In this document: positions 1 to 56,255 of the stretch, piece by piece | Layout: each line of letters opens with the position of its first letter | Position numbering within the stretch: the first letter of the stretch is position 1 | NCBI RefSeq assembly: GCF_963853765.1 | Contig: NC_088861.1 | Span: 12,276,001-12,340,000, forward strand | Reading direction: 5' to 3' | Length of the DNA stretch: 64,000 bases | Source: Magallana gigas | Lineage: Eukaryota | Translations under genes and position numbers: made by a program | The notes under the pieces: model-generated | The model's input: the letters and a program-made list of their open reading frames with translations, nothing else | Database searches by the model: none | Told to the model about the DNA's origin: nothing

Positions 1-59
1 GAATTTTATAAAATACTTACGATTGAATATGTTTGATATTGCCTGAGTGTATTTTATCT

Positions 60-2670
60 CCACGCCTTCATTTTATGATACATGTAGCCAATGCACATCT
101 CAATGATTCTGTAGTTAAACGATCATTTCCAATCAGTTTTTCTGCAAAGTTATTTGAATATCGATTTTAGTCAAAACCACAAAGAGGTATATATCTGATA
201 AATTATTGGTAATGCAGGTTAATGATAGGGACAAATGGGCTCATGGTTCAGAGGATGTGTTGGTCTCTTTTGACAATGGCATATACATATACTTATGAAT
301 TGAGATGCAATTATTAATTTCAAGACTTTGATATTTTACGCCTTGATTTATTGGTTTTTTTTTAATATTTACGTTGTCCTATACTGCAAGGTTTTTTTTC
401 AGAAACACTCAAAATTTGACCTCTTTACGTTCCAAACTCAAAGAAAAAAATCAAAAATATAGAAAATGATGTGAATATTGGTCAAAATTGTAAAACTAAT
501 GTTTTAATAATTTGCGTGCCTTTTTTTGAATGTTCGAATTAGCATTGATAACTTGAGGAATAGTTTTTAATTTTGATTTTTGTGATAAATGTACATTTCT
601 TTTTAGATTCCCCCATTTTATTTTATTTTATTTCATTTTGGTAACGTTGATCATATTTGTTGACATCGTTTTACTTAACCTTTAATTTCAAAGAAAAATA
701 GAAAATATGCTTGTTAATGAACAGAAACTACTGATTTTCAACTGAGAAAAAAATGGTAAATTATCTAATTTCATCTGTTTACTACAAGGAAATAAGAAAT
801 TGGTAATAAGTTTTAATTTTGATTTTTCTTTTGTTTAATTTATTAAAGATACAATCTACACACTAAATAAACAGATGTGTTGCAACGGACAAGTACATGT
901 AATTGATGGAAAAATGAAAAGCTGTGAAGAAGGTGCGTGCATTTGAAGTTAATTGAAGTTCAAAACGAATTTTTGGGTTTTTTCTGTTAAGTTTATTCCT
1001 CAGTCTAAATTCACATTAAGGTATTTCCATACTTGCAAAATTCTGTGATGAGAAAAAAAGGAAAAACAGAACTGTTTTCAACAAAATAGACTATATCAAA
1101 CAAAGGAAACGTTAAATTCATGTTCATTATTATGGAGAAAATATATTTTAAAATCAGAAGAAAAGTGTGATTTATTATTTTGGTATTATATCTTTTTATC
1201 AGAGGAGATTGTTGTAAAACCTAAAGAAAAGCAAGTCAAAGGTACGTATGACAATTTCATAATTAATTTAGTTTTCATTACTAACATTCTTTTGATGTTC
1301 ATTAAAACTTACTTTGTAAATCTAATGTTCAGTTGTAGATGCAGTTCAATGTGTGTATACAAAGAATGATGAAATCCTATCTGCACCGTTTGATTATAGT
1401 ACCCAGATTTGTTGCCGAAAATCAGGAGTCCTGGATAGATTTCAACAGGGACAGGAAGTGGATTGTTGTGGAGGCAATTATTAATTAAATAACATTCTTT
1501 ATATTCATTTCTTCTATAGTTTTAGCCACATGGGCCAAGCCCGTTTTAACATTTATTTCAATGTAACCATTGAACAATTGTTTTAATGATATATTTATCT
1601 TTTGAACAATGTAGATAAGAGAAATCAGATTGAAACATAACTGTGTTATGTCAGCTGTGTCAATGCACATCTCAATGATTCTGCAACAATAATTTCAAAT
1701 CATTCTTCCTTGAAAATTCATTTGAATATCAATTTTGGTCAAAACTTACAAAGAGGTGTATATCTGATAAATTACATAAATTACTGATAATACAAATTAA
1801 AGATAAGAACAAATGTGATCATGTGAAGCAGAGGATGTAGTGGTCTGTAATGACAATGGTATATACATTTACTATTCATTTAGATGCAATGAATAACTTC
1901 AAGATACTGATATATTAAGCCTTTATTCAAGTTCTTGAATATTTACGTTTGCCTAATTTTGTTTTATACTGCAAGGGGGCTTTTTTCGTTGACAATCAAA
2001 ATTTTACCTTAAGTAAAAAGGATGTTTTGTTTTCGTTTTTTTAATACAGAAAATGATATGAATATTGGTCAAAATGCAAAATTGTTAAACTAAAGTTTTG
2101 ATAATTTGATGACTGTTTTGGCAACGTCTGAATTAGCATTGACAACTTTAGCAATAGTTTACTATTTGTTTCTGATGATGAATGTATATTTTATTTTTGG
2201 TTCAGATTCCCATTTTATTATATAGTTAATATGGTTTATCATTTCGTTTTACTTTTCCTTTTTAGGTGAAATTAAAAATATGTTTATTAAATAATGAAAA
2301 GAAATTATGGATTTTTAACCGAGAAAAAAAAGTACTAAGGCCCTCCATTTACACCTATTATTTTGTTACAAGGAATGCTGATGTTACTGATTAGTTTTAA
2401 CTTTGTTGTTGTTGTTTTTAACCTTTTATAGATACAATCTACAGACCAAATATACAGATGTGTTGCGAGGGACGAGTTCATGTAATTAATGAAGAAATGA
2501 CAAGCTGTGAAAAAGGTGCGTGCATTTGAATTAGCTTTATAATTAGGTATATAATTGGGGTTTAATTTAGTTATTCTTTAGCCTAAATTCTTACATAAGT
2601 AACTCCACACTCGCAAAATTATGTGATAAAAGAAGAAAACGGAACTGATTTTAACTAAATAGACTTAAAA
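60..2670 (+). repeat. Intragenic tandem duplication of an intron+exon block (period about 1583 bp)
   Basis: Exon 849 and exon 2432 are homologous. Shared intron anchors include aatgcacatctcaatgattctg (~90 and ~1662), cagaggatgt..tggtct (~250 and ~1830) and the post-exon gtgcgtgcatttgaa. Confidence 0.85.
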
Positions 2671-3426
2671 TTATATCTATGATTTGATAAACTAGACTTG
2701 TTATCACACTTTTTCAGATCTTAGATTTAGATAAACTTAAGCACATCGTACTTTTGTTAAGCGGAAAAAGTCAGAAAAATTAGTTTTAAAACAATTTTGA
2801 TTTTATATTAAATAACATTTACCCGATTAAGGAAAAAGGGCGGGGAGAGCGATCTGACTTAGAATTACGCCCCTTTTTATTGGCTTGTCAACAGTTCTGC
2901 GTCAATAAGACGTTAACGCTCTTACGTTTAGGATTTCTTAGCTGTCAATCAAAAAGTGACGCCGCTTTGAATTTAGAGAAATTCTTAACGATTAGAAATA
3001 TCACTTAAGACAATATTTAGCGACTGCTGATTGGATGAAAAAGTTGTATGTTTTTAGTTATACTTTATGGAGATTTCTACAATTACACTTACATTCATTA
3101 AATTCATTTTGATTATTCACAGTAACATGGGGCACGGATAATCAAACAGATAAGGTCTGTGGAAATAAACCTTACTCATCGCAACACCACCATTGTTGCA
3201 GTAACGTGGTTACAAGTTTAACAGAAAGGTAAATATAGCGTTTGTTACAGAGAATAACAATTATGTTAATGAAACATATCTGCTAAGTTTTTGAAACATT
3301 GTGCATAATGGCTTTTATTTTTGTAGATGCCGCAGCAAGCAAGTAAATGTCATCCTGCGGGTTGTAAGACGCGTTTTGAAATCATTGGCTAAGAAAATCG
3401 AGGCAGGGAAAATAAATATTATTTGA
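849..3426 (+). CDS. Galaxin-like CC-repeat protein, gene 1 (5' part outside the window), with cationic C-terminal tail
   Basis: Exons 849-932, 1203-1241, 1333-1473, 2432-2515, 3123-3228, 3327-3426(TGA) splice in frame (phases 1,1,1,1,2; the donor at 1474 is GC). Translation: DTIYTLNKQMCCNGQVHVIDGKMKSCEE-EEIVVKPKEKQVK-VVDAVQCVYTKNDEILSAPFDYSTQICCRKSGVLDRFQQGQEVDCCG-DTIYRPNIQMCCEGRVHVINEEMTSCEK-VTWGTDNQTDKVCGNKPYSSQHHHCCSNVVTSLTE-RCRSKQVNVILRVVRRVLKSLAKKIEAGKINII*. Spaced CC doublets with Y..(.).Q.CC motifs are the galaxin-type repeat. Exons match genes 2 and 3. Confidence 0.8.
2690..3070. mobile_element. Probable non-autonomous interspersed element in a gene 1 intron (family unassigned)
   Basis: CpG-richer segment that begins where homology to the duplicated intron copy stops (~2670). 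No TSD or TIR identified. Confidence 0.3.
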
Positions 3427-5354
3427 TGACAAGTTCTTTTGAATTAAAGGAAATATTCATATTGCCATGCCATGTCTTGTGATTATTAGAACAATCTTTG
3501 ATTCCCAATTCCTTCACCTAAAATTGCTACAAAACGGTGGGGGGGGGGGGGGGGGCTTATATTTATTCTTTGTTACCTGAGCTAAGTTTCATCTACTTCA
3601 AAATCTGAAACAGGACTATGTTTCTAAAAAGTCTTCTTCTTTTTTTTTAAATGTAGTACCGGACTAACTAAAGTCTGAAAGTTTATTTTCAAACCGATTA
3701 CATTTGAAATTTAAAAACTGACTGTATATATAAAAAGTGATGAATGTGAAATTTCTGGGGGTAAAACAAGCAACGTATTGTGGCAAAAACTTATGTTCGT
3801 GGTATTTCTTTGTCGGAGATCAAACTAAGTAAACATTTCAGATTTTGTCGTGATATTAGTCAAACTATAAAGCATGCAAAAATACAACTGTCATATATTT
3901 TTGTCGGGCATCAGAAGTTTTTTTAAACAAACATTTGAGAATTGAATATTAAATGTCGGTGAGACATTAATATACTGAAAAGCAACATACATTTATATTT
4001 GCCTACCTGTAGATAATCACAAAATTGCTCCTATTCATAAAAACCATTTTAATACCGAAATGAAACTTTAAAATATTTTTTTAATAGGTAGACTAAATAT
4101 TTTTCTTTTCAACAAAAAAAAAATATAAAAAAACAGGCCCTAAGATCATGAAGCAGTCGAATGTCTTGCAATAGACAACATAAAAAATGAAAAGATATTG
4201 AAAAGTGTTTCTATACTATGTGGATAGTTACAAATGTTAGGAGTAATTATATGACATATCTTAATTCTAAGAAAGATTGAAATTTAGCGTCGTTACCATC
4301 AGGCCAGGTTAATACGTAAGGGTCTTCATTATATAAGCATTATTTAAAGTTTATTATGATCACTCAATTTGATAATAAGACCAAAAAAACACCCAATAAT
4401 TATATATCAGCTATCGTCTTTTTGTCGCCATTGTTAAATGGGTTATGTATAGACTAACAGACAATGTCACACTGCCAGTTACCCCCAAGGTCAAATTTTT
4501 ACGTCCATACTTTCAGCTTGAAAAACGAAAGTGATAACGTAGAATTTTTAACCGAGGTATTCACTTAAGAACTTACCGTTATCAACGAGAGTAAAGGAAA
4601 GAAGAGACTCTTCAATTTAATGTTGAAACACCTCTGTACATGTTATTTTCATTGATGAAGTTAAAGTATTAAATCTACATCCGTGCTATCATTTCTATCG
4701 AAATGAATCAACTAAATTTGTATTGTCTAAATTGAAAACAATAAAGTAAACAAGAAAAAATCATTTAATAAATGGAAAATTAATTTGCAAAGGTAAGGTT
4801 AAAAACCGCCACAACTTAAAGACCTTGGTCTTTAGGGACTCGTTGAAAACACTGGAGCATGTACCTGTACCTGAAATTGTTAATAACAAACAGATTATAT
4901 AAAAAATAATCTTCATAAGGTTGATCACTACACCTTGAAAGCGTTTCGCAAATTAGCAGAAAATTACTTAATTATGATACACTACGTATCATGATGCATA
5001 GGAAGTACATGTACTGGTTTATAAGTCAAATATGTGAGTAAAAAAATAATAATGACATACATACGCAACATTTGATTTCAAACTGAATTTAAAAATTTGA
5101 ATTCAATAATAATGAACAAAATTTTTCAGGCGTATTATGATTTGCGATTCATAAGTGGAATATTTTAACCGATGAGTTTTGATGATATATAACCAAATGA
5201 TTGATACAAATAGTTTTTAACATTTAATCGCCACCTTGTGACAAAGTGTCTTTTAAAAGTATGTCTTGATCTAGTGAGGTACCTTAAAATGATTAAATAA
5301 GACAAGAACGAGTAATGATCGTAAAGTTTCTGAAATGAGCCTTAACATTATGGC

Positions 5355-5795
5355 ATAGCAAGCTTTGTTGACCACAACCAAAACGTATAAATAGTTTTAA
5401 AATATTTTGCTTATAAAACGAAAAATAGATAAGAGCATCCCTTGTTGACCACTGTTTTAGAGAATGAACATACAACCACTTAAATAAACGTTTTGATAGG
5501 GCAAACCCTGTTAACCTATATCGAATTATACGTCGAACAATTAGCCGATAAATTTGAAAACCTTTCTAGGATTTTAATACAAAGAACACTTTTGTATATA
5601 ATTCTTAGTGACAGAAACATAGCAAGCCTTGTTGACCTTAATGAAACATTCAACATTACATTCAAATAAGAAAAATTAAAAATACTTCTATACATATAAT
5701 AAAATATAATACAGAGCAAGCCTTGTTGATCTTTTTCAACGACTCTGCATTTTCTTCTTGTCACATGCTTTCAGATAGAGCAAGCCTTGTTGACC
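5355..5795 (+). repeat. Cluster of six copies of a 19-bp motif, consensus AGAGCAAGCCTTGTTGACC, with non-identical spacers
   Basis: Copies start at 5355, 5432, 5498 (4 mismatches), 5619, 5713 and 5777. Start-to-start distances are 77, 66, 121, 94 and 64 bp. Confidence 0.75.
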
Positions 5796-8700
5796 GTTGA
5801 GCTCTATGCAGATTCCTATATACTTAATGTTAAAAGAACGAATTTTGTACACATAAATATAAAGTATAAGTATAACTATAAATAAAAAAAAACAGCTAAT
5901 AATGAGCTTGCCTAAGTATACTGAAAGTAATAAATTGTTGATACAAAGAGCACATGGATTTTGTGCAGTAGACGAAATGCTTATATTAAATCATACAAAT
6001 TTGATTAATGACTGCCTAGTCAAACATTTTTATTCTGTGCACCCTACAAAAAATTGAATCAAAAGACCAATAGCCATGTAAAAACTAAATTGTTTTGACA
6101 TTGCACATATGTTGTAAGTATATCAGTTTATTGACGAATGGACTGAAATTGATTGTTTTAAACAACCTGGTGAAATTTTAATTTAAAACAAATTGATTTT
6201 ATAGTTGCTCATAACTTTTGGCAACTGCTGAGTCAAATGTACATAGCTGTCAGCCCAAATTTTCATTCATATTTAAACCCAGAGGTTATGATACCAAGTG
6301 ATGTATTGTCATTAACTATAGTCTCTGGATTTTTTTATTGCCATTGCTGAAGTTTTTAGAGTATTGGTGGTTGGCCTAGGTTCCAGGTAGGGAAACTGAT
6401 GTTTGAAGGTGTTCTTGCATCCCTGTATCTGCTCTAAGCTGAGAAATAATCAATTATGCTATATAATATGTAGCAGAAACTTTACGACTACCGATCCGTC
6501 CAGTCACCAGTTGGTTCTGCGCTGCAGGGATGTCAAATTTTAGTCTGATCTCGCTTATTTAACCCTTGACACTGGTGTCGAGCTGCTTGTCACAGTGGAG
6601 AACCAAGCCCTTCTGCTTTGTTTAGGTATCTCTTTTCTTTGATGTACTGAAAATATATATATATAAATACGCAGTAATGATGCTAAATACACCAACTTGA
6701 AATTAAAACATCCTTAAATACTCAATGGGAATATTTTTTCCCAGTGTAAAAACATAAATAAAAACATTGAATGATGATATTTATGCACCAGTTGAAAGTA
6801 ATACAGCCTAGTGTTTTATCCATTCATTGTAATGTAATTTTATTTACATTTTAAATAAAATTCTACTTGTATCAAGTGATAACCAATCACATTTTAAAAA
6901 GATCACCATAGAGCTCAATGTGTAAATAATATAAAATACTAGATCTACATGCAATGCCCATGGACTGAATTCAAACTAAAACAAAAACAACATGTGTACA
7001 ATGTTGCAGGATGATCCAAATATAATCAGTCATACACATGAGATCCAAATTGCAACAGATTTGCATAACAATGCACTAAACTTAGTTGCACAAAACTTTA
7101 GATGCTAACCCATGAAAAAGAAACTGAGACTGTAATACAAATCATAATAACAATAATGTGAGCTAACAACCTAATGATGGATACATTAATCTTACCCAAA
7201 TTTGTTCTATCTTGCTATATATGAACGAGTTATCCTCTTATAAGTGCATCTTGTTGATTATGGGTTAAACTTTTGTAAGCGTATCTAGTTGGTTATGGCG
7301 TACCATGCACACTTAAAATAACAAAGATTTTGATAGATTTGGTTTTTACAAATGAAAGTATTTTTTCTAAAAGTTTATTCCAACTACACAACTAATTTTC
7401 AAACAACTCTTACACAATGTAAATGGCGCAATCGGAACTTCCCAGGCCTTTTTGATGGCGCTTGGGGTAAAAATACCTAGAACGTATAAACATCACCATA
7501 CGTTGGCATCTTATACAAAGTGGAGTCATTCCACACCAATAAAGTTATCGGCTAGACAATGTCTAATCTTCGGGTATATTTTTGGGTTTATTACTGATAT
7601 ACATGACGTTTGCTCTGTATTTATATCTAGTTTTTAGCTTAAGTTTTATATACAGAAGGTTGTCTTGAATGACGAGAACGTGTTTCGCCAGTTTAAATGG
7701 TTCGAGAAGTTCCAAATCAGGTGACAAGTGTTCCCAATCGAATCTTGTACAGTGTATGTCGAATCTTAAATCTCGAATAAGCCTTATAGGCTTTCGTATA
7801 TTAAGGACAATACAAACATTTAGATGGAGAGCGCCAACACCTCTTTCCAGTTGATGTATTAACATGCTTGCTTCTTTTCTTTTGAAGAAGAAGTAATTAA
7901 TGTGAGAAGTTCTGATTAATCAGAAGAAGATGCTACTTACCTTTATAATAGAATAGTTTTTAGACGATTGTTGCAAATTGTTAGGAACATCTCTGTATAG
8001 GAATGTATGTTAATATACATGTACTTAATTAATTATTTACTACCAATTGAAAGTTATTTCTGTTCATTAAATATAGACAGGTATTATATTTATTTGATGT
8101 GTAGTTGAAAATGATTTATATCAAGAATTTTTTCTTATAGTTTACTTTAATGATTTTTATTTATGCAGTCTTTATATTGCACAGGTTTGCGTAAACTCTT
8201 CGCATATATGTATTTATTTGCATTCGCTACTCAAAATTAGTTATTTTCCGTTCGATATGTTTGTTATAATCTTGTACACTATCGAACACGTAATGTCTTT
8301 ACACATAAAAAATTACATGAGAGTAAGTTTTGTTAACATCAGTTGTTCAGTAATGATATTGAGAGTACAATTAAAAAGTAGGCATTTTTCAGTGTTTTTA
8401 TTAAACAACCATCGTTTAAAATCAATTGCGTAAAATGCGAACAAATGTTTCCTTGGTCATGATATCAGTTGAGTGGGTAAAACACGAGAAATATCAACAT
8501 TTAAATGCCCTTTTCATTTCCAAATAACCGAAAGAAAACCCCTTTTATATTATACACTATACATTTACATCACTGAGTATGATTCCTTCTATTTCTTAAG
8601 AAAATTAATTGTAATTCACAGCTCTTTAGAAACTAACAGGACTGAAATATGACCAGTTTATCGATCGACGACGATTATAAGACCACTTAGCTTTTTTTAT

Positions 8701-9273
8701 CCAACGTACTGGTGTATATTCATAATAACTAAGTCACTCTATCAATCAACTCATTAATTTGTTAAAAGAGAGATGAAAATAAAAAGAATACAAATGCTCT
8801 CTTTGATAATCCATGTGGATTATGAAGAAAGATACCATTGCAGAAGAAATTAACATAACCCGGTAACGCGTGTTAAGTGTTTTTCTCTGTTGTCGCTACT
8901 TTCATATCCCGGATGAATTTATTGTTGAAATATGTGCACCAGCTCGATTTGCTTTTATGTTTTTGTGAAAATTTGGCAATCTAAATATATTTAGAGAACA
9001 AGTAGGAAGCTTAATGTAAACAAGTGACTTTGTATTTGTTATTCCTCATATAATTTTATGATAATTAAGCAAGCATACCGTTTAAAATCTGTTGAAAAGA
9101 ATAAAAACAAATAATTGTCATTACAAATCTTTCTTTCAAGATACAATACCAGTGTTGTTTACTCAATCTGAGACGTTACACAACTTTTAATGTTCCTAAA
9201 ATCGTGTCCCATATGACATATTATACCTTGCAAGTAATAACGGAAACATGGGGGTTGATATTGGACAAAATAG

Positions 9274-9313
9274 GGGAGATTTTCAACGCCCAAGCAAAGC
9301 AATACTATAAAAG
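9274..9313 (+). promoter_or_regulatory. Core promoter of gene 2: GGGAGATTTT motif plus TATAAAAG
   Basis: GGGAGATTTT at 9274 and TATAAAAG at 9306, 68 bp before the ATG. The block is conserved upstream of gene 3. Confidence 0.55.
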
Positions 9314-9373
9314 CAAGACAGTCCTAAGTACCTGTATTTTATTTTGACAAATAATAATTTCCTCTCAACAAAT

Positions 9374-10378
9374 ATGTTTATTTTATTATTACTAACTTTT
9401 GGACTCCAGTGCAAAACAGCTGCAGTAAAGAATGATAGGAGCATAGGTATTCATTTTAAAAAAAATCCTGAGATTTTTAACTGATATGGCAATGGGTATA
9501 ACATGAAAAATGATACAGTTGTAGATGACGAGTGTGTGTACACACAGAATGGTGAAATTCAGTATGCAAAATTTAATGAAACAACACAAATTTGCTGCCC
9601 CAGATCTGGTGTTCACGACAAATGTCAGCAGGAACAGGAAGTACAATGTTGCGGGGGTAAGTGGAAATTAAAGATATTATTTCCATAGCAATCATAAATT
9701 TAGACGTCTTAGTTTTTTACCAGTGTAACATTCCTAATAAAACTCAATATGCAACGTCCGAAGATGAATTGAAATCGATAATTTCATTTTATTACTTTTC
9801 TATCTGCTAATATAAGAATGTCTGTTTTAGTTTGAAAACCCTTAGTTTTTTTATTTTTATATATCTTGATTTCATTTCACTTTATTTTTGATGTTGAAAA
9901 AAGTAAAATTAAGAAATGTATTTAATTAATGAACCGAGATTGTAAATCGTTGCCTAAAGGCAAAAGAATAAGTAAGGTTATGATGAATTTGATACAAGAA
10001 AATAAGGCCTATCTGATTAGTTTTCGAGTTTTTTTTTTATTTTTCTACCAATTATAGATAAAATTTACAGACCAAGTAAAGAGATTTGCTGTGAAGATAA
10101 GTCATACTCATCACAACACCACAGATGCTGTGGAAACATAATAACAAGTTTAAGAGAAAGGTAAATAAAGCGTTTGCTACAGAAAACAACAAGTATGGTA
10201 TAGAACATGTCAGCTTTATTTCTGAAACGATATGGACATTTTTCTGTAACCTTGTAGATGTGGCAACAAGAAAGGAAGGGGCATTCTGCGCTTTACAAGA
10301 CGCATTTGGAAATCCTGGCTAAGAAAATCGAGGCGGGGGAAATCAATATTGATGATGATATTCCTTTGCAAAAAATAG
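9374..10378 (+). CDS. Secreted galaxin-like CC-repeat protein, gene 2 (144 aa), with Arg/Lys/Trp-rich tail
   Basis: Exons 9374-9446, 9519-9656, 10058-10160, 10258-10378(TAG), all GT-AG, 435 nt in frame. MFILLLLTFGLQCKTAAVKNDRSI-VVDDECVYTQNGEIQYAKFNETTQICCPRSGVHDKCQQEQEVQCCG-DKIYRPSKEICCEDKSYSSQHHRCCGNIITSLRE-RCGNKKGRGILRFTRRIWKSWLRKSRRGKSILMMIFLCKK*. Hydrophobic N-terminus reads as a signal peptide. Exon 1 and exon 2 lengths (73 and 138 nt) are identical to gene 3. Confidence 0.85.
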
Positions 10379-13300
10379 CTTAATGTCGTGCAAGTTTTGT
10401 ATGCACTAGCATCTGGCAAATTTTTAATTGTGAAATAAATTTTGTAAAATATTTATCTTTTTTGTTGATATTTACAGTCAAATTGTTAAATGTCTTGTCT
10501 TGTTAATTGTTGTCAATTTCCCTCTCGTCTAGAGCGTTGAAAAAAGAAGACGAATTTTCACAGCTTGGTTTCATAGCTTTAATAACAAACGAAAACCAAG
10601 TTTTTGTGTTTATACCAACACATTTTAATATACAAATAAAATATATATCTGGATTATGCCAATTTGTGGTCAGCTTTGCTAAATATAAATTTCACAATAG
10701 CAAGGTAACTGGATGGAAAGACCAAAATTTACTTTTGGAATATCTGAAAGGGAAAAAACGTGTTATTGTCGAGAAACAAATGTAACGCAGGTTTTTGTTG
10801 TTTTTTGTTTTGTTTTGTTTTTTGGGGGGGGGGGGTTGCGACATTAGCTTAAGTATACATGTACTGTTAAAAGGATTTTTGTAATAACAGAACAATACAC
10901 GTTTTCCAAATCCATCACATAAATTTTATATAAATTCTATAAGTTCTGAGTGTACAGTTGTTGCATGTACGTAAATGAATTATATGAAATACAAACAAAT
11001 TCAACAACCATCCTTAGTGTATTTGTTTTTGGGTCAGACAAATCTTGGATTCTTTAAAACTCAGAAGAAACTACAGCATGGAATCAACAGACTAACACTA
11101 ATAAAGTTGATTTAAAGACTTAAAGATTTAAAGGTAAAACGAAACCAAAAACTTTTGACAAACTTGTCAGAAAATGAACATAAATTCAATGCATCAAATA
11201 ATTGTGGGGGAGGGGGTAAATTAGGACTAAAACCTTGTTTATATATTGATTTTTCGGAACGTTTTAATTGTGGATGGAAAAATGACAATAACAAACCGTC
11301 AACCATCTCAAAAATCCATAAAACGAAAACAAATTCAAAGCAGTGCAACACGGACATCCAAAAAGATAGAGGTAGGATCAGGTGTTTAGGAGGAGTAAGT
11401 ATCCTGCTTACTGTTCATACCCGTCGTGTGCTCTTTGTCGTACTGGGGGGGGGGGAGGAAAAGTCCGTAGACAATTAGGTACATGTAATTAATTATGATT
11501 TAACAATTAGTATGAAAAACGTCGGTCAGCATGCGACCCAGTGGAAGATTGTATTTGCTGACAAAAAGGTGACTTCAAACGGGACTTTTGATTGTCCTGT
11601 TTTATCAACTTGTTTGTCAGTAGCTTGCCTCGCCTTAGATATTGTTCATACGAAGAGCATGGCCTTGTGTATCGAATTGATTGAGAGACAAAAACACCAT
11701 ATGTAGGTATATAGGTATATTGCTACATAAGTAAGGAAAGTTGACTATATAAAAATTGAAGACATTGCGTTTATCCTAAAGTTTTGTTGTTAGATTACCA
11801 TCCATTTGCAGTAAAATATCCAAAAATGAAACAGATGACGCAGACTCTGTGGATACACACATAACCCATTACATTTGTTAATAAAGGTGTATTATCAGCA
11901 GTGTGTGTTAACTGTTGATGACTAATCGATGCTAAACACAAAAAATATTGAAAACAATGTTTACGTGGCATTTTTTAAATTTTGAAACATGAAGGACATT
12001 AGCGTAGAATGCCCCACTTTCTCCCGGCAGATATAAAAATAGCCTGTATGAACATACATTTAAATTTCCTGTTCTGTCCAAACATCGGAGGAAACCCCCT
12101 TAGGCAAGTTCTCGGTATTGTAAGCTGCAAAGTATTCTACGAATTTAAGAGGGTTCTCATGTTAACATTTATTGATGAATGACATTTTTAAGGTAACAAA
12201 ACAAAACTATGTGACCTCCTTCAATCTTTACATTTAATTTACATTAATTTAAATATGTATATGTATCATCAGATGAAGAGACAGTGTATTATTGCAATAC
12301 ATTTTCCCTGCGCTGACAAGTAGAAATCAAATTATCTTATAGTAAAATTGAAAAACAGTGCATAACACAATCTAAAGTGATCGCCTTGATAAATGCATAG
12401 GTTTACTTTGCATTTAAACAGGAGACACCTATAAATAAATAAATGTAGACAAGATCCTCCACGTAGTTGTGTCTAGATATAGATGCGTTATGCCCCCCCC
12501 CCCTCCCCCTCTCAGATAAGGAAATAAACCTTCATTTCTGAAAAACCTTCTCTGGTTCAACACTCTAAACTTGTTTATATAAAGAAAGGTCCTTAACTAT
12601 TTATTGTTTTTTATGGAAACAGTACAAACCCAAAATGTCAATTTATCTAAATTACAAAATCATTATAACCATATTATAAATGTATAAAAAATTGTTTAAT
12701 ATATAAAGATAAGGCAATGCAACTTAGTAAAATATGGTATTATTCACACTTAAAAAGGTGTACTTTAAGCTCAAATATAAGATTCAACCTATCGATTTCT
12801 TGACAATGTCAAAATTGCAACAATCTTTAAATTCAAATATTCTATCTCTCTTGTATACAATATTTGCTTGATAAAGAATAAGAGACAGTATACGCAAACT
12901 GTCTTTTAACCAGACCTCTAAATTGCGTATATTTTATAAAATATATATGGTTATTATACAAATTAATATAATTCTTCCAAATGAATTTAAATCTATTATT
13001 TTTTTGGAGGGATATTTTAAAAGACGAACCTTACAAATTGTTAATTAGAGGTTAAAAAAATGTAAAATGTATGCAAAATAAATGAATAATGTTCAGGGCA
13101 GAGAAGCAAGTAAGTGATCTTGTAAAGTGCTAATTGGAAGCACCATTCAGTATTCAGCTATATTAAGGTTTTCAGTCTAATCGAAAATGTAATGGTTTAA
13201 TGTATATCTTTTTAAATTTCTTATCATTTTCATTTCAAATAATCATGCTGTTGTTTGTGTTCGTACTCTGCCGGATATGGCATAATTAAAAAGAAGGATT

Positions 13301-13473
13301 CAATAAGACTTTAGATAAAGGACCAATGACATATTTAAAAGACTCAGGGGCAACGTAATTGACTCAAAAGAGGATTTGCGTCATAAGATCCGTATTTCTT
13401 TAAATGAATCAGCTTTTTTTACAATATTATTAACAATATGTACGAAAAAGAAAGATCGATACTGGGCCAAAAC

Positions 13474-13512
13474 GGGAGATTTTGAACGTCCTACAAAAGT
13501 GGTATATATAAG
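13474..13512 (+). promoter_or_regulatory. Core promoter of gene 3: GGGAGATTTT motif plus TATATAAG
   Basis: GGGAGATTTT at 13474 and TATA at 13505. Spacing is 31 bp, versus 32 bp in gene 2. Confidence 0.55.
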
Positions 13513-13564
13513 CCGAGGAGTTGCATGCATAAAACTATATTAACCTTTCCACAGAATACGAAAA

Positions 13565-15623
13565 ATGTTCAATATGATTTTTATATGTTTGGGAGTTTTT
13601 TGCATAATGATTTCAGTGAACTGTGAAAAGAAAATAGGTATGTTTTCTATTATTTTTAAACCAAAAACATAAACTTCAGAAATTTAGCCGGCATAAATTA
13701 TTGGAAAATATTATAGTTGTAGATAGTGAGTGTGTCTACACGAAGATCGATGAAATTCTGGGTGAAAAATTTAATACAACGACACAGATTTGCTGCAAGG
13801 GGTCAGGAGTTCACGATAAATATCAACTGGGACAGGAAGTAGAATGCTGTGGAGGTAAGAAATTTTAATTAAAATCAACATTTATTCACATAAGTGCAGA
13901 AGATGATTTTCTTTATAACGACATGCCATCTTTTTTTTTAATCATTTATCCAAACGAGCAATGACCATTGAAACAATAATTAATTCTATATATTATATAC
14001 TCAGGAACAACTATTTATTAAATGCAGAGGTTGTATTTCATTGCAATTTAATAAACGTTCAAGTTTTATGGAGAAAGAATTGATTTTACTATAACAATAT
14101 TTTTACTGTGTTTTTAAACCTTTATAAAAAAAATTAAATGTAATCTATTTTAAATCGACAACTAACACACATAAAGTGCAACAAAACTGGTAACTAAAGG
14201 TTTTTAATTACAGATTGATATTTGTTACATGTTATCAAAATGAAGAGAAATAGCTATGCATATAGATTTAGGAGTTCTCTGAACTTATTTTTTTACGTGT
14301 TCAACATTATCTAACAGGACTGTTTTAAAATCGTCCCTTTTTCTATCTCAGAAAGAATTTACAGAAAGGAGAAAGAGATGTGTTGCAACGGACAAGTCCA
14401 TTCAAAGGATAACAATGTGAAAAACTGTAAACAGAGTTAGTATTCATTTGTTTCGTTTGGACGTTATTTTTAGGTTTAACAATAATCAGTTGCAGTATAG
14501 TGAACTGGTTGAGTTTTATCATTTTTGTGTCAAGTATGAACAGGAAAATGTAACGCCTCCAGAAAAATTGATAAAGCGCAATTCCTAAAAAACCTTTAAT
14601 CTTCCTTCTATAGTTAAGAAAGGTTCTCACGAAATTTATCGTGGAGGCGATATATTAAGTATTTTTCCATGGTTTAATATCATCAGATGTATATCGTGAT
14701 GGCTTCAATAATATTGTCCCTCCTACTAGTAAATTACTAAATATGTAATATATCCCTGAAATATTTTTAATGGACCCCCGAATGGATTTAAATTGTTTTA
14801 AATCCACATATCACTGCCATTGTTTGGAAACACTTATCTCAATTGAAAGTTGGTTTCTTTAAAAAAAAAAATACATTTTTGTAGCTTTTACCTATAGTTT
14901 ACTATAAACAACGCATCAGTTGCATTATTGTACCTATAAAAAAAAACCCGTTGATACAGGTTTTTACGGCAAATAATAGTAGACTAAATTAAAAATATAA
15001 TCAATCATTTTATTGATTACTAGTATTTCTATCTATGATATCAAGCATTTCAGTATATTCTACTTTTGTTAACACAATTTTTTAGTGGGTTGTCAGCTAC
15101 TTATATGCGTATGTTTCATATAAATTCCTAATTAATTTAACTTAAGATCAAAGGTTTATTTTAAAATACATTTTCTTCCTTTTTAAGAATGCATTTACTG
15201 CTTCACAGTTTAAATAACGCTATCAAATGTCAGTTGAAAATTATCTCTGGAAAGGAATAGTGGCGATTTTTAAATGACTAGGCTTGGATTGTTTTCATTA
15301 ATTAAAACCTATGTTTTTCAAGAAAAAAAAGTATATGACTTTTTACAGGAACACAGATCTTGGACAGTTGGAAAGTCACTAAAACAAGGTAAATACCTTA
15401 TCAAAGTAAGCAAGAGAATATTCAACTAATATTTATCCAATAATCATTATTGGTTCGTTTTCCCTTGCTTTTATAAAGTTTTAAACGTTTTTGTTTCATT
15501 CCTTTTAGATACAATAGGAGACATTTTATGGAAGTCAATGGATTTGTTGGGCGGGTTTTGAAATTGTGGTTAAGAAAATTAAAACAAAGAAGGCCATTGG
15601 TGATAGTGTTCAAAGCAAAATAA
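13565..15623 (+). CDS. Secreted galaxin-like CC-repeat protein, gene 3 (149 aa), with cationic tail
   Basis: Exons 13565-13637, 13717-13854, 14352-14435, 15349-15388, 15509-15623(TAA), all GT-AG, 450 nt in frame. MFNMIFICLGVFCIMISVNCEKKI-VVDSECVYTKIDEILGEKFNTTTQICCKGSGVHDKYQLGQEVECCG-ERIYRKEKEMCCNGQVHSKDNNVKNCKQ-RTQILDSWKVTKT-RYNRRHFMEVNGFVGRVLKLWLRKLKQRRPLVIVFKAK*. Confidence 0.85.
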
Positions 15624-16263
15624 ATCTATAGCCATGATGCATGATACAATTTCATTTCAATGCAAGAATGTATTTTATCAGTAAATAAGGTTGTGGTAGA
15701 GTGAAATTTTATGCATTAGATATGTTTATTATGTTATATGTATTATTGCATAGTTTTGGTGATTATGTTCCATTTTTTTCTAACATGAAAATATTTGAAT
15801 ATTGGTACAGTGTATTGTTTTCATATTACTATTTAGTCAATGCAATATTCAATTGAAATATTTAAATCAATTATTTACAGTTATCTTACCACAATGTTAG
15901 AGTCCTATCATTTGTTTTTTTAACTGTGGCAATGCAAAATCTATATTTAGAAGGAATACCCTTCTACCTGTATTCCTATATTTCTATTGTATAAAAAAAA
16001 TCAGCTGTTACTTCATTGGTCATGCCAGACTCATGTGACAATTTTAGTGGGTCTTCTGTTAAACCAGTTCTTGTTCTGAAGTCTACTTCTGTTGACCTGA
16101 AATTTACATATTTTATCAGGTCAGTTGATTTACATTTTTTTATACTAGCTAATATTTAAATAGTCATATTATGAGATTATTTATAGAGATACTTAAGATA
16201 TTATATAGTTGGCTTTGAAAAAAAATGACTAAATATTATTTTAAAAAATGTTTAGTAAAACTC

Positions 16264-17031
16264 AGTCTGGTCAATGAGTACAAAGCATTGTAAGTACATG
16301 TGTATTTTTTATTTTCTTGAACTAAGATTATCAACTACAGTATTCATTTTACATTCTGAATAATTTTCCTAATCAACCTTTACACTTCACGTTAGGTATA
16401 CACAGTTTAAGCAATTTTAAACATGGTTTAAGCTTAGTTCATGTATAGTTGAATATATCATTATATCATAGTATAAGCAGTTTTTTAAAAATGATAAATA
16501 TTTCTATAATTTCATTATAAATTCATGTGAAATAATTTTGACATGATAACTTAGTTTTCTTCATGCGAATGTCATTATAATTGTTTATTTATTTAATTAC
16601 CCGATAATTTGTTTAAGGATACAAATATTTTTGAGTCTTGTTTGAAAAGAGAAATACTTTCATCTTATGTCAAAACTGCATGTATGTAAGAGTTATCTTT
16701 CCTATCTCACAATAATTTTATTTCAGGGTTTACCTATATCCTTACTTACACCTATTTTGTATGATATACTACTTTGTTACATCAAATAAAGAAGTAAACG
16801 GAATGAACATAGTTACTTCAGCATCTTAGATTAAATGATAGTCTGTTTGTACATAAATATAGCCTAATCTATTGCAGATCAGTTAAATATATCATATAAA
16901 CAGCTAAAACAAATTAGAATAAGAAGCAGATATAATCCTGACTCTAACAATTTACATCTGCGCAACATGAGATTCATTTCTTGTTATTTCTTTTTCTTTA
17001 AAATTAATTGGCTTGTGACACACTTTTGCTC

Positions 17032-17098
<67 letters not shown>

Positions 17099-17949
17099 AC
17101 ACACGCTATCTTTATCTCGTAAACAAAACAGAAGAATATGATAACCAAAAAAGACAAATAATAAAGAAATAAGAAAAAGTCTGGTCAATGAGTACAAAGC
17201 ATTGTAAGTACATGTGTATTTTTTTATTTTCTTTAACTTAGATAATCAACTACAGTATTCATTTTACATCTTGAATAATTTTCCTAATCAACCTTTACAC
17301 CTCACGATATGTATACATAGTTTAAGCATTTTTTAAACAAGGTTTAAGCTTAGTTCATGTATAGTTGAATATATTATTATGTCATATATATTAGTAGTAT
17401 TATGAAACTGATAAATAGTTCTATAATTTCATTATAAATTCATGTGAAATGAATTTGACATTATATCTTACAGTTTTCTTCATACCAATGTCATTATAAT
17501 TGTTTATTTATTTAATTACCCGATAATTTGTTTACGGATACAAATATTTTTGAGTTTTGTTTGTAAAGAGAAATACTTTCATCTTATGTCAAAACTGCAT
17601 GTATGTAAGAGTTATCTTTCCTATCTCACAATAATTTTATTTCAGGGTTTACCTATATCCTTACTTACACCTATTTTGTATGATATACTACTTTGTTACA
17701 TCAAATAAAGAAGTAAACGGAATGAACATAGTTACTTCAGCATCTTAGATTAAATGATAGTCTGTTTGTACATAAATATAGCCTATCTATTGCAGATCAG
17801 TTAAATATATCATATAAACAGCTAAAACAAATTCGAATTAGAAGCAGATATAATCCTGACTCTAACAATTTACATCTGCGCAACATGAGATTCATATCTT
17901 GTTATTTCTTTTTCTTTAAAATTAATTGGCTTGTGACACACTTTTGCTC

Positions 17950-37720: not shown

Positions 37721-40700
37721 TTAGTGTTTATCTTTTGTACGTGGAAACAATGGATTAAACTGGACATATAGATCACATTTGGTTATGATGTTATGAAACA
37801 CATGGAGAAAACAAAGTAGAAGAAAAATCATGATTTGAAATATATAATAACGTTTCTAAGTTAAAACTTACAATATTTGATCATGATATGTACTTTTAAA
37901 AATCCTTTTCAAAAAGTAAGCTATGACTTGCTGAGTTTGACAAAAGAACTTAGACAAAGTCGTTAATATTTTCAGTCTCATTGAATGGTCTTTAATGAAC
38001 ATAAAACCATATTTTACAACTGTTTTGATTTTTACAATTGTACTTTAGAGCCATTAAAATCTAACAATGTTTAGTTCATGATGTATTAGCATTCATAAAT
38101 TTGGTCGTGAGTCTTTGTAAAACGCAGTCCTGTACCTTTCTCTGACAATTTGACCTGTTGTACCAAGCAGAAGTGACGTACTTATAAGATTAAAGGTAAT
38201 TCAAATACTTGTTCCTGAAAAAGATCTTTCATTATAAAGGTATCCCTTAGTCCAATAACATTTTCAGGCAAAACTAAAGCGATAAAATTTCTAGATAGGA
38301 ATAGTGACGATACAATGGGCAATTAATAAGATGGGTGTAAAATGTCTACCTTTCTGCTTTTCCTTTTACTTCACCATGACAACAAATCTGGTTTCTAGGA
38401 TCGTAGGCAAGCGTCCCTGGATTACAGCATCGTTTTCCCATTTTATGTGCCCCTCTATGAATTTCATTGTTGCAGCAGAGGTCTGATTTCTTGTCGTAGC
38501 TTTGCCTCCCACAAAAATCGGATTTTTTCTTTTCCTGCTTTTTACAAGAAAAAAAGGAGGTCGCATTTTTATTGCAACAACTAGTGTGATCGGGTAAAGT
38601 CTTTTCAATAGTGGATCCATTTTCGCAGCAAAGCTGCGTCGTTGAGTAGTACACATTGTTTCCACAACAATGTAATTTTGAATTATAATTTGTTGTGTAT
38701 ACAGTACCTAAGATGAAACAAAAATGTAGACAGAATGTACATTCTTTTTTTAAAAATTAAAACACAACGTGAATTTTTGACAAATTAAAATTGATTCGAA
38801 GAATTTGTTTATAATTTTGCCCTTTTTTGTTTAAACTAATTTGACTACTATTGAAATTTGCTACTTCCATTGAACATTACAAGAAACTGAGCTCCTAGTA
38901 TAAAAATAATATATACCATCACAACAGATTTGCTGCCCCTGTTGCATTGCTGTGGAGAAATTGGTACCATAACAACACTCTTGGTGAGACGGGTCGTATG
39001 TACCTTTACCACAGCAATGAAGTCGTCCATCGGAGGGGAACACTTGTGTCTTGCAGCACAGTTCTTGTGAGGAATCGTACAATCCTATTTGTAATTAAAC
39101 AAACTTTAGCTTTGGAAATTTATGTAAAATCATACTTAATATCATTAAAATTATCCAGCTATTCATTTCATAAAATGATAACAATTTTAAGATCGAACTG
39201 TAAATATGTTGTACTTACCTGTTCCACAACATTGACCATTTTTGGGCTGAATTTTCTTTTCACCAGATCCCCTACAGCACTGTTTAGTCCTTTTATCATA
39301 CACTTCCGATCCACAGCATCGGAAGTGCCGGTCGTACGATGAAATATTCCACAAAGTGGAGTCTTCACAACATTTTTGTGTCTGTCTGTTAAACAGAGTT
39401 CCATTACAGTAGTCATGTCCTAATGGAACAACCTTGTCCCTAACGCATCGTGAATGGGTCCTATTGAATGGTGTTGTTTGGTTGCAGCAACCATCATTCT
39501 TTGTATAGTTGTTCCCACAGCATGACATGCCTAAAGAGTAATTTTTTCAAGGTAAGACTGCTATATAGAATTGATGCATAGATAAATAGATATTTTACTT
39601 TTCAGTCGAATTAAAAAGTTATCTAGGCTTCCATCATTTGAAGGGGGTGCATAAATGGAACTATCAACCGGGTGTGTGTGAAGGGTTGTCCTGTAAATAT
39701 GGATGAGACCTTAAACGACTAACCAAGGTTAATTGCCATGGCCGATTGAGTTCATTCAAATTTTTAAAAAAATGCTTACACTTGCAGTAAGCATTTACTC
39801 GTATCCGGCAATGGACCTTACTAGTATTTGAACCCAGAAAGCATGGCAAGAAAAAAAAGAAGTTTTATTATTATTCTATTCTGTTTTTCCTTATAATATA
39901 CGCCATTGATGTAGTGGGATAGTTATTATAAAATTTAAAGGAAGAAAACAAACACCATTGCTTGTGATAAAAGGAGCTGATTTCATATACTAATATATGA
40001 TATCACTGTCCAGAAATATTTTAATTTGCTCTACAAAATTAAAGGGAACTATACACGATTTCAGATTGAAAAAATATTTTTAATTTTGTAAATAAAATGG
40101 TTTATTTGTGTATTTTGAATGATTCACCAAAAGTTGAATGTAAGAAATTAAGTTTCAGGCGAGATAGGGAGCAAAAAAGGCGTTGTTATATGTAAACAAA
40201 GTCTTATATTTGATTACTACAAGTAACTTTGTAAACTAAAGAAATACCATTTCATTGACAAAATATATTGTGGCAAACAAGATGAGCTGATTCATTGCAT
40301 TTACAAATACTTTCATCAACAACAAAATACAACATTAGATTGACACTTCTACCGATACAACATATAAGTTAACAATATCAGGTCTCGAGTTTTATTTACA
40401 AAACAAAGAACTCTAACCTTTGTTACTCGCTTGTAACTCGATATTTGACTTTCAAATGTTAACAAAGCTTTAAAAACATCCATTTTGACTATTCTTGACA
40501 TTGAAAATGCAAAATCTAAATTTTTTGCTGAAAATCGTGTCCACGTCCCTCTAGAATGATAAACAGGAAATACGCTCTGATAAGAAGAAAATAAATGACT
40601 CGAGTAAGGACTATCGACGGGGCAGAGATTGTGGGACGGTTCTTATTTATCTCTACTTTGCGTGATAATGTTTATATCTTTTTAAAAAAGTCTTACTAAA

Positions 40701-42088: not shown

Positions 42089-42146
<58 letters not shown>

Positions 42147-42206
42147 ATGGAATATTAAACAACACAACTGGTGTTTTTTAACCCCAACAAATGTGTCTTA
42201 TTTACT

Positions 42207-42252
<46 letters not shown>

Positions 42253-55824: not shown

Positions 55825-55906
55825 TTAATGCCGATTTATAGAACGTTATTTTTGAGATCGGAAATTCCAAATAAAATGCATTGTAAAAATAAAGACACAT
55901 AATGTT

Positions 55907-55956
<50 letters not shown>

Positions 55957-56175
55957 AACTTACCAAAGGCCACTTGAAAAATGTTTGTTCCACAACATAT
56001 TTGTTCTTTTTTTTGGTCTTCCCCACTTTGAACATGTCTCTCACGTAAAGAATTAGGCCCGCAACAGATCTTATCTAAGACGTTGTATATAACATCTACA
56101 AAATATTTTGCAAAATTATATAACGTGTGATTAGAATGTAGATAACGATTATTATATTCAGGTATATTTAAATAC

Positions 56176-56252: not shown

Positions 56253-56255
<3 letters not shown>

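What the first reader, a model, noticed from the sequence alone, without database searches (positions are those of the whole stretch)
849..15623. Three secreted galaxin-like paralogs each carry a cationic amphipathic, antimicrobial-peptide-like tail
Seen: after a disulfide-rich CC-repeat scaffold, each gene has a separate last exon encoding a basic tail. Gene 1 RCRSKQVNVILRVVRRVLKSLAKKIEAGKINII has 10 K/R and 1 E. Gene 2 RCGNKKGRGILRFTRRIWKSWLRKSRRGKSILMMIFLCKK has 15 K/R and no acidic residue. Gene 3 RYNRRHFMEVNGFVGRVLKLWLRKLKQRRPLVIVFKAK has 12 K/R and 1 E. Hydrophobic residues fall at about i/i+3/i+4/i+7, and each tail starts at basic motifs (ERCR, KKGR, RYNRR) that could be convertase sites. 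Known: galaxins are coral skeletal-matrix proteins; a squid galaxin (EsGal1) has reported antimicrobial activity; cationic amphipathic helices are the classic AMP architecture. Inference: this may be an unrecognised mollusc host-defence family of galaxin scaffold plus releasable or tethered AMP helix.
Basis: partly seen in the sequence, partly recalled or inferred. Interest (0 to 1): 0.85.

Follow-up and report, generated by a model that had tools for sequence, protein, structure and literature searches.

The report
Oyster galaxin-like proteins with basic tails
Three neighbouring Pacific-oyster genes belong to an unnamed, oyster-only family of small secreted cysteine-rich (galaxin-like) proteins that end in a strongly positively charged tail encoded by its own last exon; the tail is real and conserved, but an antimicrobial role is only a plausible, untested idea.

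Summary
Three + strand genes carry CC-repeat (galaxin-like) exons and end in a separate phase-2 last exon. That exon encodes a 33-40 residue tail of net charge +9 to +15.

- **Splicing:** for gene 3, all four introns appear as GT-AG joints in RNA contigs from two studies, and the tail is in frame.
- **Family:** relatives were found only in oysters (Crassostrea/Magallana, Saccostrea, Ostrea). Nearly all are annotated "uncharacterized protein".
- **Conserved design:** galaxin scaffold, polybasic tail, short hydrophobic block near the C-terminus.

- Gene 1 starts upstream of the window. Its tail has a +1-nt frameshift relative to genes 2 and 3 and to its C. angulata ortholog.
- Helical amphipathicity is significant for genes 1 and 2, borderline for gene 3, and absent in eight more distant relatives.
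- No scaffold-tail junction has a canonical furin site.
- Gene 2's last intron appeared only unspliced in the RNA contigs laid.

My reading is an attached polybasic anchor that docks the scaffold onto anionic surfaces. Microbial or mucosal surfaces are slightly favoured over shell matrix. A released antimicrobial peptide is possible but unsupported. I class it as a new variant of a known kind, of moderate interest.

The parts
849..932 (+). Gene 1 (5'-truncated by the window edge), A-type CC exon
   Evidence: ag|AT acceptor and G|gtgcgt donor, in frame with the following exons. Homologous to the A-type exons of L001.
1203..1241 (+). Gene 1, probable 39-nt mini-exon (EEIVVKPKEKQVK), a relic of a duplicated signal-peptide exon
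   Evidence: Canonical ag/gt sites, phase 1 to phase 1. Equivalent mini-exons are spliced into the NCBI C. angulata model P0008. In L001 the first copy carries ATG plus a hydrophobic leader.
1333..1473 (+). Gene 1, B-type CC exon with a GC donor
   Evidence: The GAG|gcaa donor is conserved at all five B-type exons of the C. angulata ortholog.
2432..2515 (+). Gene 1, second A-type CC exon (internal duplication 89-1092 = 1661-2665)
3123..3228 (+). Gene 1, D-type CC exon ending ...SLTE + AG|gtaaat
   Evidence: Pfam Galaxin_repeat 20.5 bits.
3327..3426 (+). Gene 1 tail exon (33-residue tail, net +9; stop 3424-3426). The distal half is frameshifted by a +1 nt insertion near 3385.
   Evidence: The C. 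angulata ortholog reads the ancestral frame.
9374..9425 (+). Gene 2 exon 1, signal-peptide-like leader. An alternative weaker donor at 9446 is also in frame.
   Evidence: The CAG|gtaaag donor matches the exon 1 end of the NCBI paralog models P0005 and P0050.
9519..9656 (+). Gene 2 B-type CC exon
10058..10160 (+). Gene 2 fused A/D-type CC exon ending ...SLRE + AG|gtaaat
   Evidence: Pfam Galaxin_repeat 21.1 bits.
10258..10378 (+). Gene 2 tail exon (40-residue tail, net +15; stop 10376-10378); AATAAA at 10434
   Evidence: RNA contigs cover 10013-10480 but leave the 97-nt intron unspliced. The tail is 81-86% conserved in the paralogs P0005 and P0050.
13565..13637 (+). Gene 3 exon 1, signal-peptide-like leader
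   Evidence: RNA joint 13633->13713 (cut +4).
13717..13854 (+). Gene 3 B-type CC exon
14352..14435 (+). Gene 3 A-type CC exon
   Evidence: RNA joints 13852->14350 (cut +2) and 14435->15349.
15349..15388 (+). Gene 3 40-nt exon, a decayed D-type remnant without CC
   Evidence: RNA joints on both sides in runs X2 and X5.
15509..15623 (+). Gene 3 tail exon (38-residue tail, net +11; stop 15621-15623, overlapping AATAAA at 15619)
   Evidence: RNA joint 15386->15507 (cut +2) in two runs of two studies. In-frame translation.

Best explanation
**What it is.** Genes 1-3 are tandem members of an oyster-restricted family of small secreted galaxin-repeat proteins. The body is a stack of beta-hairpins rich in CC pairs, presumably held by disulfides. 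A dedicated phase-2 last exon adds a 33-40 residue polybasic tail. The tail is predicted to form a flexible helix followed by a short hydrophobic block.

**How I think it works.** The tail stays attached to the scaffold and acts as an electrostatic and hydrophobic anchor. It docks the galaxin body onto anionic surfaces. I slightly favour microbial envelopes or mucus (host-microbe interface) over shell-matrix polyanions. In the gene 1/2 clade the tail also has the physical properties of a membrane-active helix.

**Shown:** gene structures, in-frame splicing of gene 3, conservation of the design in oysters, charge segregation, and amphipathicity in one clade.

**Inferred:** secretion, that the tail stays attached, its binding target, and any antimicrobial effect.
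For: - **Splicing.** The splice sites and phase are the same in all three genes. RNA joints for every gene 3 intron put the tail in frame.
- **Family.** A profile of the B-type exon against 1.84 billion proteins found 34 relatives. Every one that carries an organism name is from Ostreidae.
- **Shared ending.** Full-length members from C. gigas, C. angulata, C. virginica, Saccostrea and Ostrea all end in a K/R-rich stretch plus a 6-9 residue hydrophobic block. Several share W[KR]SWLRK-type motifs.
- **Charge segregation.** Tails carry net +5 to +17, while scaffolds carry -7 to +6.
- **Structure.** In the AlphaFold model of P0005 the scaffold has pLDDT 84-89 and the tail is a helix at residues 103-122 with pLDDT about 57-62. 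I read that as a helix that does not pack on the body.
- **Fold.** The nearest fold matches are Galaxin-repeat clusters, TM 0.55 and 0.45.
- **Processing.** No conserved processing motif lies at the junction.
- **Selection.** The scaffold B exon is under purifying selection (omega 0.11-0.19). The tail changes residues freely but keeps its charge (omega about 0.95 over 19 codons).
- **Frameshift.** The gene 1 frameshift still yields a cationic end.
Against: - No tissue, induction, protein-level or binding data exist for any member.
- Gene 2's last intron was seen only unspliced, and an unspliced mRNA would stop right at the donor (AGG TAA). Tail-less products may therefore be common.
- The window's gene 1 has lost the ancestral hydrophobic end through a frameshift. 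Tail omega near 1 is also what relaxed constraint would give.
- The Cys at tail position 2 is often an odd, unpaired cysteine and is missing in some members. Its role (tether, dimer, none) is unclear.
- Dibasic pairs are frequent, so proteolytic release cannot be excluded.
- Signal peptides were judged by eye only.
Confidence: 0.4

Rival explanations
1. First reader's model. The proteins are pro-antimicrobial peptides: a convertase cuts at the basic motif at the start of the tail and releases a cationic amphipathic helix that permeabilises microbial membranes.
For: - Gene 1/2-clade tails have a high charge and a hydrophobic moment of 0.62-0.69, significant against shuffles.
- A helix is predicted there.
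- The tail diversifies quickly and the genes are tandemly duplicated, as in many immune effectors.
- The near-neutral or acidic scaffold could neutralise the tail, like a propiece.
- Squid galaxin-derived peptides inhibit bacteria (PMC12773714).
Against: - No R-X-[KR]-R motif lies at any of the three junctions. Basic pairs sit at different positions in different members, and they are expected by chance in a tail that is 30-38% K/R.
- Amphipathicity is absent in 8 of 12 relatives.
- The conserved hydrophobic C-terminal block is not a usual feature of linear helical antimicrobial peptides (own knowledge).
- The squid activity resides in a CC repeat at 50-300 uM, not in a tail.
- There is no induction or peptide evidence.
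Confidence: 0.13
2. Biomineralisation or matrix role. The genes are expressed in shell-forming mantle, and the polybasic tail binds acidic shell-matrix proteins, sulfated polysaccharides, chitin or carbonate. It anchors a galaxin-type framework protein.
For: - Galaxins were defined as coral skeletal matrix proteins. The bivalve galaxin-like cysrichin is a mantle and gill matrix protein that affects CaCO3 polymorph (PMC10045328).
- Galaxins are listed among bivalve shell-matrix effectors (PMC9768464).
- The conserved property of the tail is charge plus a hydrophobic block rather than helical periodicity. That fits polyanion binding.
- Basic C-termini occur in other mollusc shell proteins (own knowledge).
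Against: - No member was found in the papers searched by LOC or XP identifiers.
- RNA support came from oyster 'metatranscriptomic' runs of unknown tissue, at low depth.
- The fast-evolving, polymorphic tail and lineage-specific expansion fit immune genes at least as well.
Confidence: 0.25
3. The tail is an intracellular sorting or membrane-association signal, for example a basic amphipathic C-terminal helix that targets cargo to regulated secretory granules. It would not be an extracellular effector.
For: - It is a C-terminal basic helix plus hydrophobic block on a secretory protein.
- Comparable C-terminal helices sort carboxypeptidase E and the prohormone convertases to granules (own knowledge).
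Against: - The charge density (+9 to +17 in under 45 residues) is far higher than needed for sorting (own judgement).
- There is no sequence similarity to known sorting helices, and the tail-only search found nothing outside the family.
- The idea is purely analogical.
Confidence: 0.07
4. The tail is a weakly constrained, drifting 3' coding extension with no specific function. Its positive charge is a by-product of an A/G-rich exon.
For: - Tail omega is about 0.95.
- A frameshift is tolerated in gene 1, and both frames come out basic.
- A polymorphic stop (TGC>TGA at 10369) appears in RNA contigs.
- An unspliced form ends at the donor.
Against: - The open frame, the position of the last intron, the polybasic character and the hydrophobic block persist across Crassostrea, Saccostrea and Ostrea.
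- The W[KR]SWLRK motif is shared by C. gigas and C. virginica.
- Neither would be expected without selection.
Confidence: 0.08

Closest known systems
Galaxin / galaxin-like proteins (Pfam PF24748 Galaxin_repeat; coral galaxin, bivalve cysrichin, squid EsGal1-10)
   Same: - Secreted, Cys-rich, with tandem repeats carrying di-cysteine (CC) motifs.
- Pfam Galaxin_repeat hits on exons and relatives.
- The predicted beta-hairpin stack best matches Galaxin-repeat models.
- They sit in a cluster with larger galaxin-repeat genes on the minus strand.
   Different: - Much shorter, with 2-5 repeat units in genes 2 and 3, and scores at or below the Pfam cutoff.
- They carry a polybasic C-terminal tail on a dedicated exon. 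The galaxin papers read here do not describe such a tail.
- The tailed subfamily was found only in Ostreidae.
Squid EsGal1/EsGal2 antimicrobial galaxin peptides (PMC12773714 and its ref. 41)
   Same: Mollusc galaxins proposed to control bacteria. They are cationic overall and are predicted to have a beta domain plus an alpha-helical element.
   Different: - The tested squid peptides are internal CC repeats (EsGal1R3, EsGal2R4), active at 50-300 uM.
- In the oyster genes the candidate element is a nearly Cys-free C-terminal tail, and the scaffold itself is neutral to acidic.
- No orthology was shown.
Linear cationic amphipathic alpha-helical antimicrobial peptides (a functional class: cecropin-, magainin-, cathelicidin-type)
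   Same: Net charge, length of 30-40 residues, and in genes 1 and 2 a significant 100-degree hydrophobic moment.
   Different: - There is no defined processing site.
- The tail is attached to a folded scaffold.
- It has a hydrophobic C-terminal block.
- Amphipathicity is not conserved in the family.
- No sequence relative outside the family was found.
Heparin/polyanion-binding basic C-terminal tails of secreted proteins (own knowledge, e.g. TFPI and EC-SOD; Cardin-Weintraub-type BBXB clusters)
   Same: Clusters such as RKSRRGK and RKLKQRR on the C-terminus of a secreted, disulfide-rich protein. Such tails often show secondary antimicrobial activity (own knowledge).
   Different: There is no homology, only an analogy of composition. 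Binding was not tested.

Membership tests
Galaxin-repeat proteins (PF24748) | Tandem repeats with di-cysteine (CC) motifs | tested here: met
   CC pairs in B-, A- and D-type exons of all three genes: 4 pairs in gene 2, 3 in gene 3, 5 in the visible part of gene 1.
Galaxin-repeat proteins (PF24748) | Pfam model score at or above the gathering cutoff (28 bits) | tested here: inconclusive
   - Window exons can only be scanned singly: 15.5-21.1 bits, below the cutoff.
- Full-length relatives: P0005 28.7, P0020 30.4, P0027 60.2.
- P0050, P0009, P0013, P0033 and P0039 score 21.6-27.8, and P0006 and P0021 have no hit.
Galaxin-repeat proteins (PF24748) | Fold like other galaxin-repeat proteins | tested here: met
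   The AlphaFold model of P0005 (81% identical to gene 2) best matches two Galaxin_repeat clusters, TM by query 0.55 and 0.45. No solved structure is available for comparison.
Galaxin-repeat proteins (PF24748) | N-terminal signal peptide (secreted) | tested here: inconclusive
   - Hydrophobic leaders are present in genes 2 and 3. No signal-peptide predictor was available.
- The gene 1 leader is outside the window. A candidate sits in the C. angulata ortholog.
Cationic amphipathic helical antimicrobial peptides (functional class) | High net positive charge | tested here: met
   Tails carry +9, +15 and +11. Relatives carry +5 to +17.
Cationic amphipathic helical antimicrobial peptides (functional class) | Amphipathic alpha-helix | tested here: inconclusive
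   - Significant against shuffles for gene 1, gene 2, P0005, P0050 and P0048.
- Borderline for gene 3 and P0006.
- Not significant (p>0.3) in 8 other relatives.
- A helix is predicted at low pLDDT.
Cationic amphipathic helical antimicrobial peptides (functional class) | Defined proteolytic release from a precursor (e.g. furin R-X-[KR]-R or a conserved dibasic site) | tested here: not met
   The junctions read ERCRSK, ERCGNKKGRG and TRYNRRH. None has R-X-[KR]-R, and basic pairs are not conserved in position in the family alignment.
Cationic amphipathic helical antimicrobial peptides (functional class) | Measured antimicrobial or membrane-permeabilising activity; immune-type expression | not testable with these tools
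   No papers mention these loci. The tissue of the RNA runs is not given.
GPI-anchor signal / C-terminal transmembrane anchor | C-terminal hydrophobic stretch of about 12-20 residues, preceded by a small-residue omega site (GPI) or about 20 residues (TM) | tested here: not met
   The hydrophobic block is only 6-9 residues. It is preceded by K/R rather than small residues, and it is sometimes followed by further polar sequence.

The most novel reading that the evidence does not exclude
Oysters have evolved a lineage-specific host-defence family in which a galaxin scaffold carries a tethered or releasable membrane-active cationic tail. Whether the tail is added depends on splicing of the last intron, because retention stops translation exactly at the donor. 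The tail exon also tolerates frameshifts because two of its frames encode cationic peptides. If so, galaxins would be a general molluscan antimicrobial scaffold and not only a biomineralisation protein.
Probability: 0.2. Interest if true: 0.7.

Novelty: new variant of a known kind. Interest (0 to 1): 0.45.

Why it matters
- **Oyster immunity.** Pacific oysters suffer mass mortalities from Vibrio and OsHV-1, and their repertoire of immune effectors is still being catalogued. A whole tandemly expanded, oyster-only family is currently labelled just "uncharacterized protein". It has a clear two-module design and is a concrete, cheap-to-test candidate: three short peptides, plus recombinant protein with and without the tail.
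- **Galaxin function.** It bears on the open question of what galaxins do outside corals, biomineralisation or control of microbes. Here the charge sits in a separable exon, so the two modules can be tested independently.
- **If it is a matrix anchor.** It would then add a new type of basic shell-matrix protein.

Tried and rejected
- **Manual frame error.** By hand-counting I first thought gene 3's 40-nt exon put a stop before the tail. A script using the RNA joints showed that I had mis-indexed one base and that the tail is in frame.
- **PDB fold search.** Foldseek against the PDB gave nothing with E<0.6.
- **Tail-only searches.** The language-model and Atlas search on the tail alone gave no usable hit. 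The tail-only protein search found only the two closest paralogs, so there is no evidence that the tail exon is shared with other scaffolds.
- **Exact-protein locus look-ups.** These failed for P0050, P0005 and P0033, so codon-level comparison of close paralogs was not possible.
- **Literature.** Searches by six LOC ids and six accessions returned nothing.
- **GPI-signal or transmembrane reading of the hydrophobic end.** Rejected on length and context.
- **Tail Cys tethered to the scaffold.** Cys parity varies between members, so this is left open.
- **GC donor of gene 1's B exon as a sign of decay.** Rejected, because GC donors are conserved at all five B-type exons of the C. angulata ortholog.
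- **Not done.** Spliced window proteins could not be passed to Pfam or the structure tools, because they have no single reference. I used P0005 (81% identical to gene 2) instead.

Full report
**Setting.** The window is AT-rich animal DNA of about 30% GC. That agrees with every named protein relative found here.

**Gene models.** Stop-free segments with CC motifs on the + strand, self-comparison and direct reading of splice sites give three genes.
- **Gene 2** has four exons: 9374-9425, 9519-9656, 10058-10160 and 10258-10378. It encodes 137 aa.
- **Gene 3** has five exons: 13565-13637, 13717-13854, 14352-14435, 15349-15388 and 15509-15623. It encodes 149 aa.
- **Gene 1** is visible from 849. 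Its exons are 849-932, a probable 39-nt mini-exon at 1203-1241, 1333-1473, 2432-2515, 3123-3228 and 3327-3426.
- In all three genes the tail exon follows an ...AG|gtaaat donor and a ...tag| acceptor in phase 2. The split codon gives the first Arg of the tail.

**RNA evidence.** I laid contigs or reads of four RNA runs on 10000-15999.
- Every gene 3 intron appears as a GT..AG joint: 13637/13717, 13854/14352, 14435/15349 and 15388/15509.
- The last two joints appear in runs X2 and X5, which belong to different studies.
- Translating the exons as joined gives one open frame from ATG to the stop at 15621-15623, tail included.
- For gene 2, contigs from the same two runs cover 10013-10480 without splicing the 97-nt last intron. 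No 10160->10258 joint was seen.
- These libraries also hold unspliced gene 3 pieces, so they contain pre-mRNA. This is absence of evidence for splicing of gene 2, not evidence that it fails.
- An unspliced message would end the protein at the donor (AGG TAA) in all three genes. That follows from a phase-2 AG|GTAA donor.
- The gene 2 contigs are a roughly 3% divergent allele that keeps the tail frame but has TGC>TGA at 10369. That removes the final three residues, so the allele ends at the hydrophobic block.
- Gene 1 splicing was not tested.

**Gene 1 is larger than the finding says.**
- The C. angulata locus L001 aligns with window 2-4609 at 84-87% identity.
- L001 holds five B-type and five A-type exons, then the D exon and the tail exon.
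- About 5.3 kb upstream of the point that matches window position 1 lies an ATG exon with a hydrophobic leader fused to the mini-exon sequence.
- Gene 1 therefore begins outside the window. Its signal peptide is inferred by orthology only.
- All B-type exons of this gene use GAG|gcaa donors in both species, so these are conserved GC-AG introns.
- The C. angulata tail reads in the frame of genes 2 and 3 (...LKLWLRKPRQGKSIL...). The window copy has one extra base near 3385, so it ends ...SLAKKIEAGKINII.
- In the ancestral frame the window copy would also meet a TAA.
- The distal half of the gene 1 tail is therefore a derived frameshift product, an allele or an assembly error. It is still cationic.

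**Family.**
- A profile of the three B-type exons was searched against 1.84 billion representatives and gave 34 hits.
- Every hit that carries an organism name is from Ostreidae: C. gigas, C. angulata, C. virginica, Saccostrea cucullata and Ostrea edulis. One further hit carries only the name 'hypothetical protein', with no organism. Nearly all the named ones are 'uncharacterized protein'. Two Saccostrea proteins are called 'galaxin-like'.
- Pfam Galaxin_repeat scores are 15.5-21 bits on single window exons. On full-length relatives they are 21.6-60.2 bits against a cutoff of 28, and two relatives have no hit.
- The AlphaFold model of P0005 (81% identical to gene 2) has a beta-hairpin scaffold at pLDDT 84-89.
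- Its best fold matches in the ESM Atlas are Galaxin-repeat clusters, TM 0.55 and 0.45. The PDB holds nothing similar.
- The window also carries larger galaxin-repeat genes on the minus strand.

**The tail across the family.**
- Full-length relatives end in the same way. After ...[ST]L[TR]E comes R, usually followed by a Cys. Then come 20-30 K/R-rich residues and a 6-9 residue hydrophobic block. Some members then have extra residues.
- C. gigas and C. virginica share W[KR]SWLRK.
- Net charge is +5 to +17 for tails and -7 to +6 for scaffolds.
- Helical amphipathicity was measured as the maximum 18-residue moment at 100 degrees against 2,000-5,000 shuffles.
  - It is significant for gene 1, gene 2, P0005, P0050 and P0048.
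  - It is borderline for gene 3 and P0006.
  - It is absent in eight others.
- What is conserved is therefore charge plus the hydrophobic block, not the amphipathic helix.
- AlphaFold predicts a helix for residues 103-122 of P0005 at pLDDT about 57-62, and the last ten residues fall below 50.
- Cys parity differs among members, so the role of the tail Cys is open.

**Selection (small samples).**
- Nei-Gojobori omega is 0.11-0.19 for the B exon and 0.2 for the end of the D exon.
- It is about 0.95 for the 19 tail codons shared in frame by genes 1 and 2.
- It is 0.8-2.5 for A-type exons.
- The tail changes residues freely while keeping its composition. That fits diversifying immune effectors. 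It also fits a composition-constrained basic tail.

**Processing sites.**
- The junctions are ERCRSK, ERCGNKKGRG and TRYNRRH, and none contains R-X-[KR]-R.
- Minimal RXXR or dibasic pairs occur, but at varying places. They are expected in sequences that are 30-38% K/R.
- Release by a convertase is therefore not supported, though it is not excluded.

**Literature.**
- Squid EsGal1 and EsGal2 repeat peptides inhibit bacteria at 50-300 uM. The squid galaxins are cationic and expressed in symbiotic organs (PMC12773714).
- The bivalve galaxin-like cysrichin is a mantle and gill shell-matrix protein (PMC10045328).
- Galaxin is among infection-modulated genes in mussel gill (PMC7772429).
- Nothing was found on the oyster loci themselves.

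**Verdict.**
- I favour an attached polybasic anchor for anionic surfaces, with confidence 0.4. The main rivals are a shell-matrix role (0.25) and a released antimicrobial peptide (0.13).
- It is a new variant of a known kind: a galaxin-repeat protein with a new C-terminal module.
- Interest is moderate until expression or activity data exist.
- Another first-stage note reports a similar tail 538 kb upstream in the same genome. I did not examine it.

Noticed in passing
window 1-3426 and L001:8793-18590: Gene 1 is the 3' part of a long multi-unit galaxin-like gene. In C. angulata the unit [mini-exon, B exon, A exon] is repeated five times. The mini-exon is a relic of a duplicated signal-peptide exon. 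Every B-type exon uses a conserved GC donor (GAG|gcaa), which is an unusual run of GC-AG introns.
   Followed up: partly
window 11200-12000 (copy on the minus strand at 48071-48577): A repeat element has very high depth in all RNA runs, with summed word depth about 1,900-2,900 against 5-40 for the genes. It also shows many loose ends at 11277/11278 and 11328. It is probably an abundant transcribed transposon or SINE-like element lying between genes 2 and 3.
   Followed up: no
window 10369-10375: RNA contigs from two studies carry a gene 2 allele, about 3% divergent, with TGC>TGA at 10369. The protein then ends at the hydrophobic block (...MMIFL) without the final CKK. This is a polymorphic C-terminus.
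   Followed up: partly
window 3388-3420 vs 10317-10349: The distal tail segment is 30/33 nt identical between genes 1 and 2 although it is read in different frames. That is higher than the 71-81% identity of the flanking exon and intron sequence. The cause could be chance (p about 0.05), gene conversion or a nucleotide-level constraint.
   Followed up: no
window 38400-42400, 53400-56400, about 22550 and about 24730 (minus strand): More galaxin-repeat (CC) exons lie on the minus strand, so the window is a galaxin gene cluster. The 36997-42687 gene was already reported by this scan as galaxin plus an NTR-like domain.
   Followed up: no
window 16264-17918: A tandem duplication (16264-17000 vs 17178-17918, 94.7% identity) flanks a (GA)n/(CT)n microsatellite near 17000-17100.
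   Followed up: no
window 3538-3556, 10820-10835, 11165-11180, 11440-11455, 12480-12500: Long poly-G/poly-C runs recur, for example about 19 G in the gene 1 3' UTR. They may be tails of a repeat family.
   Followed up: no
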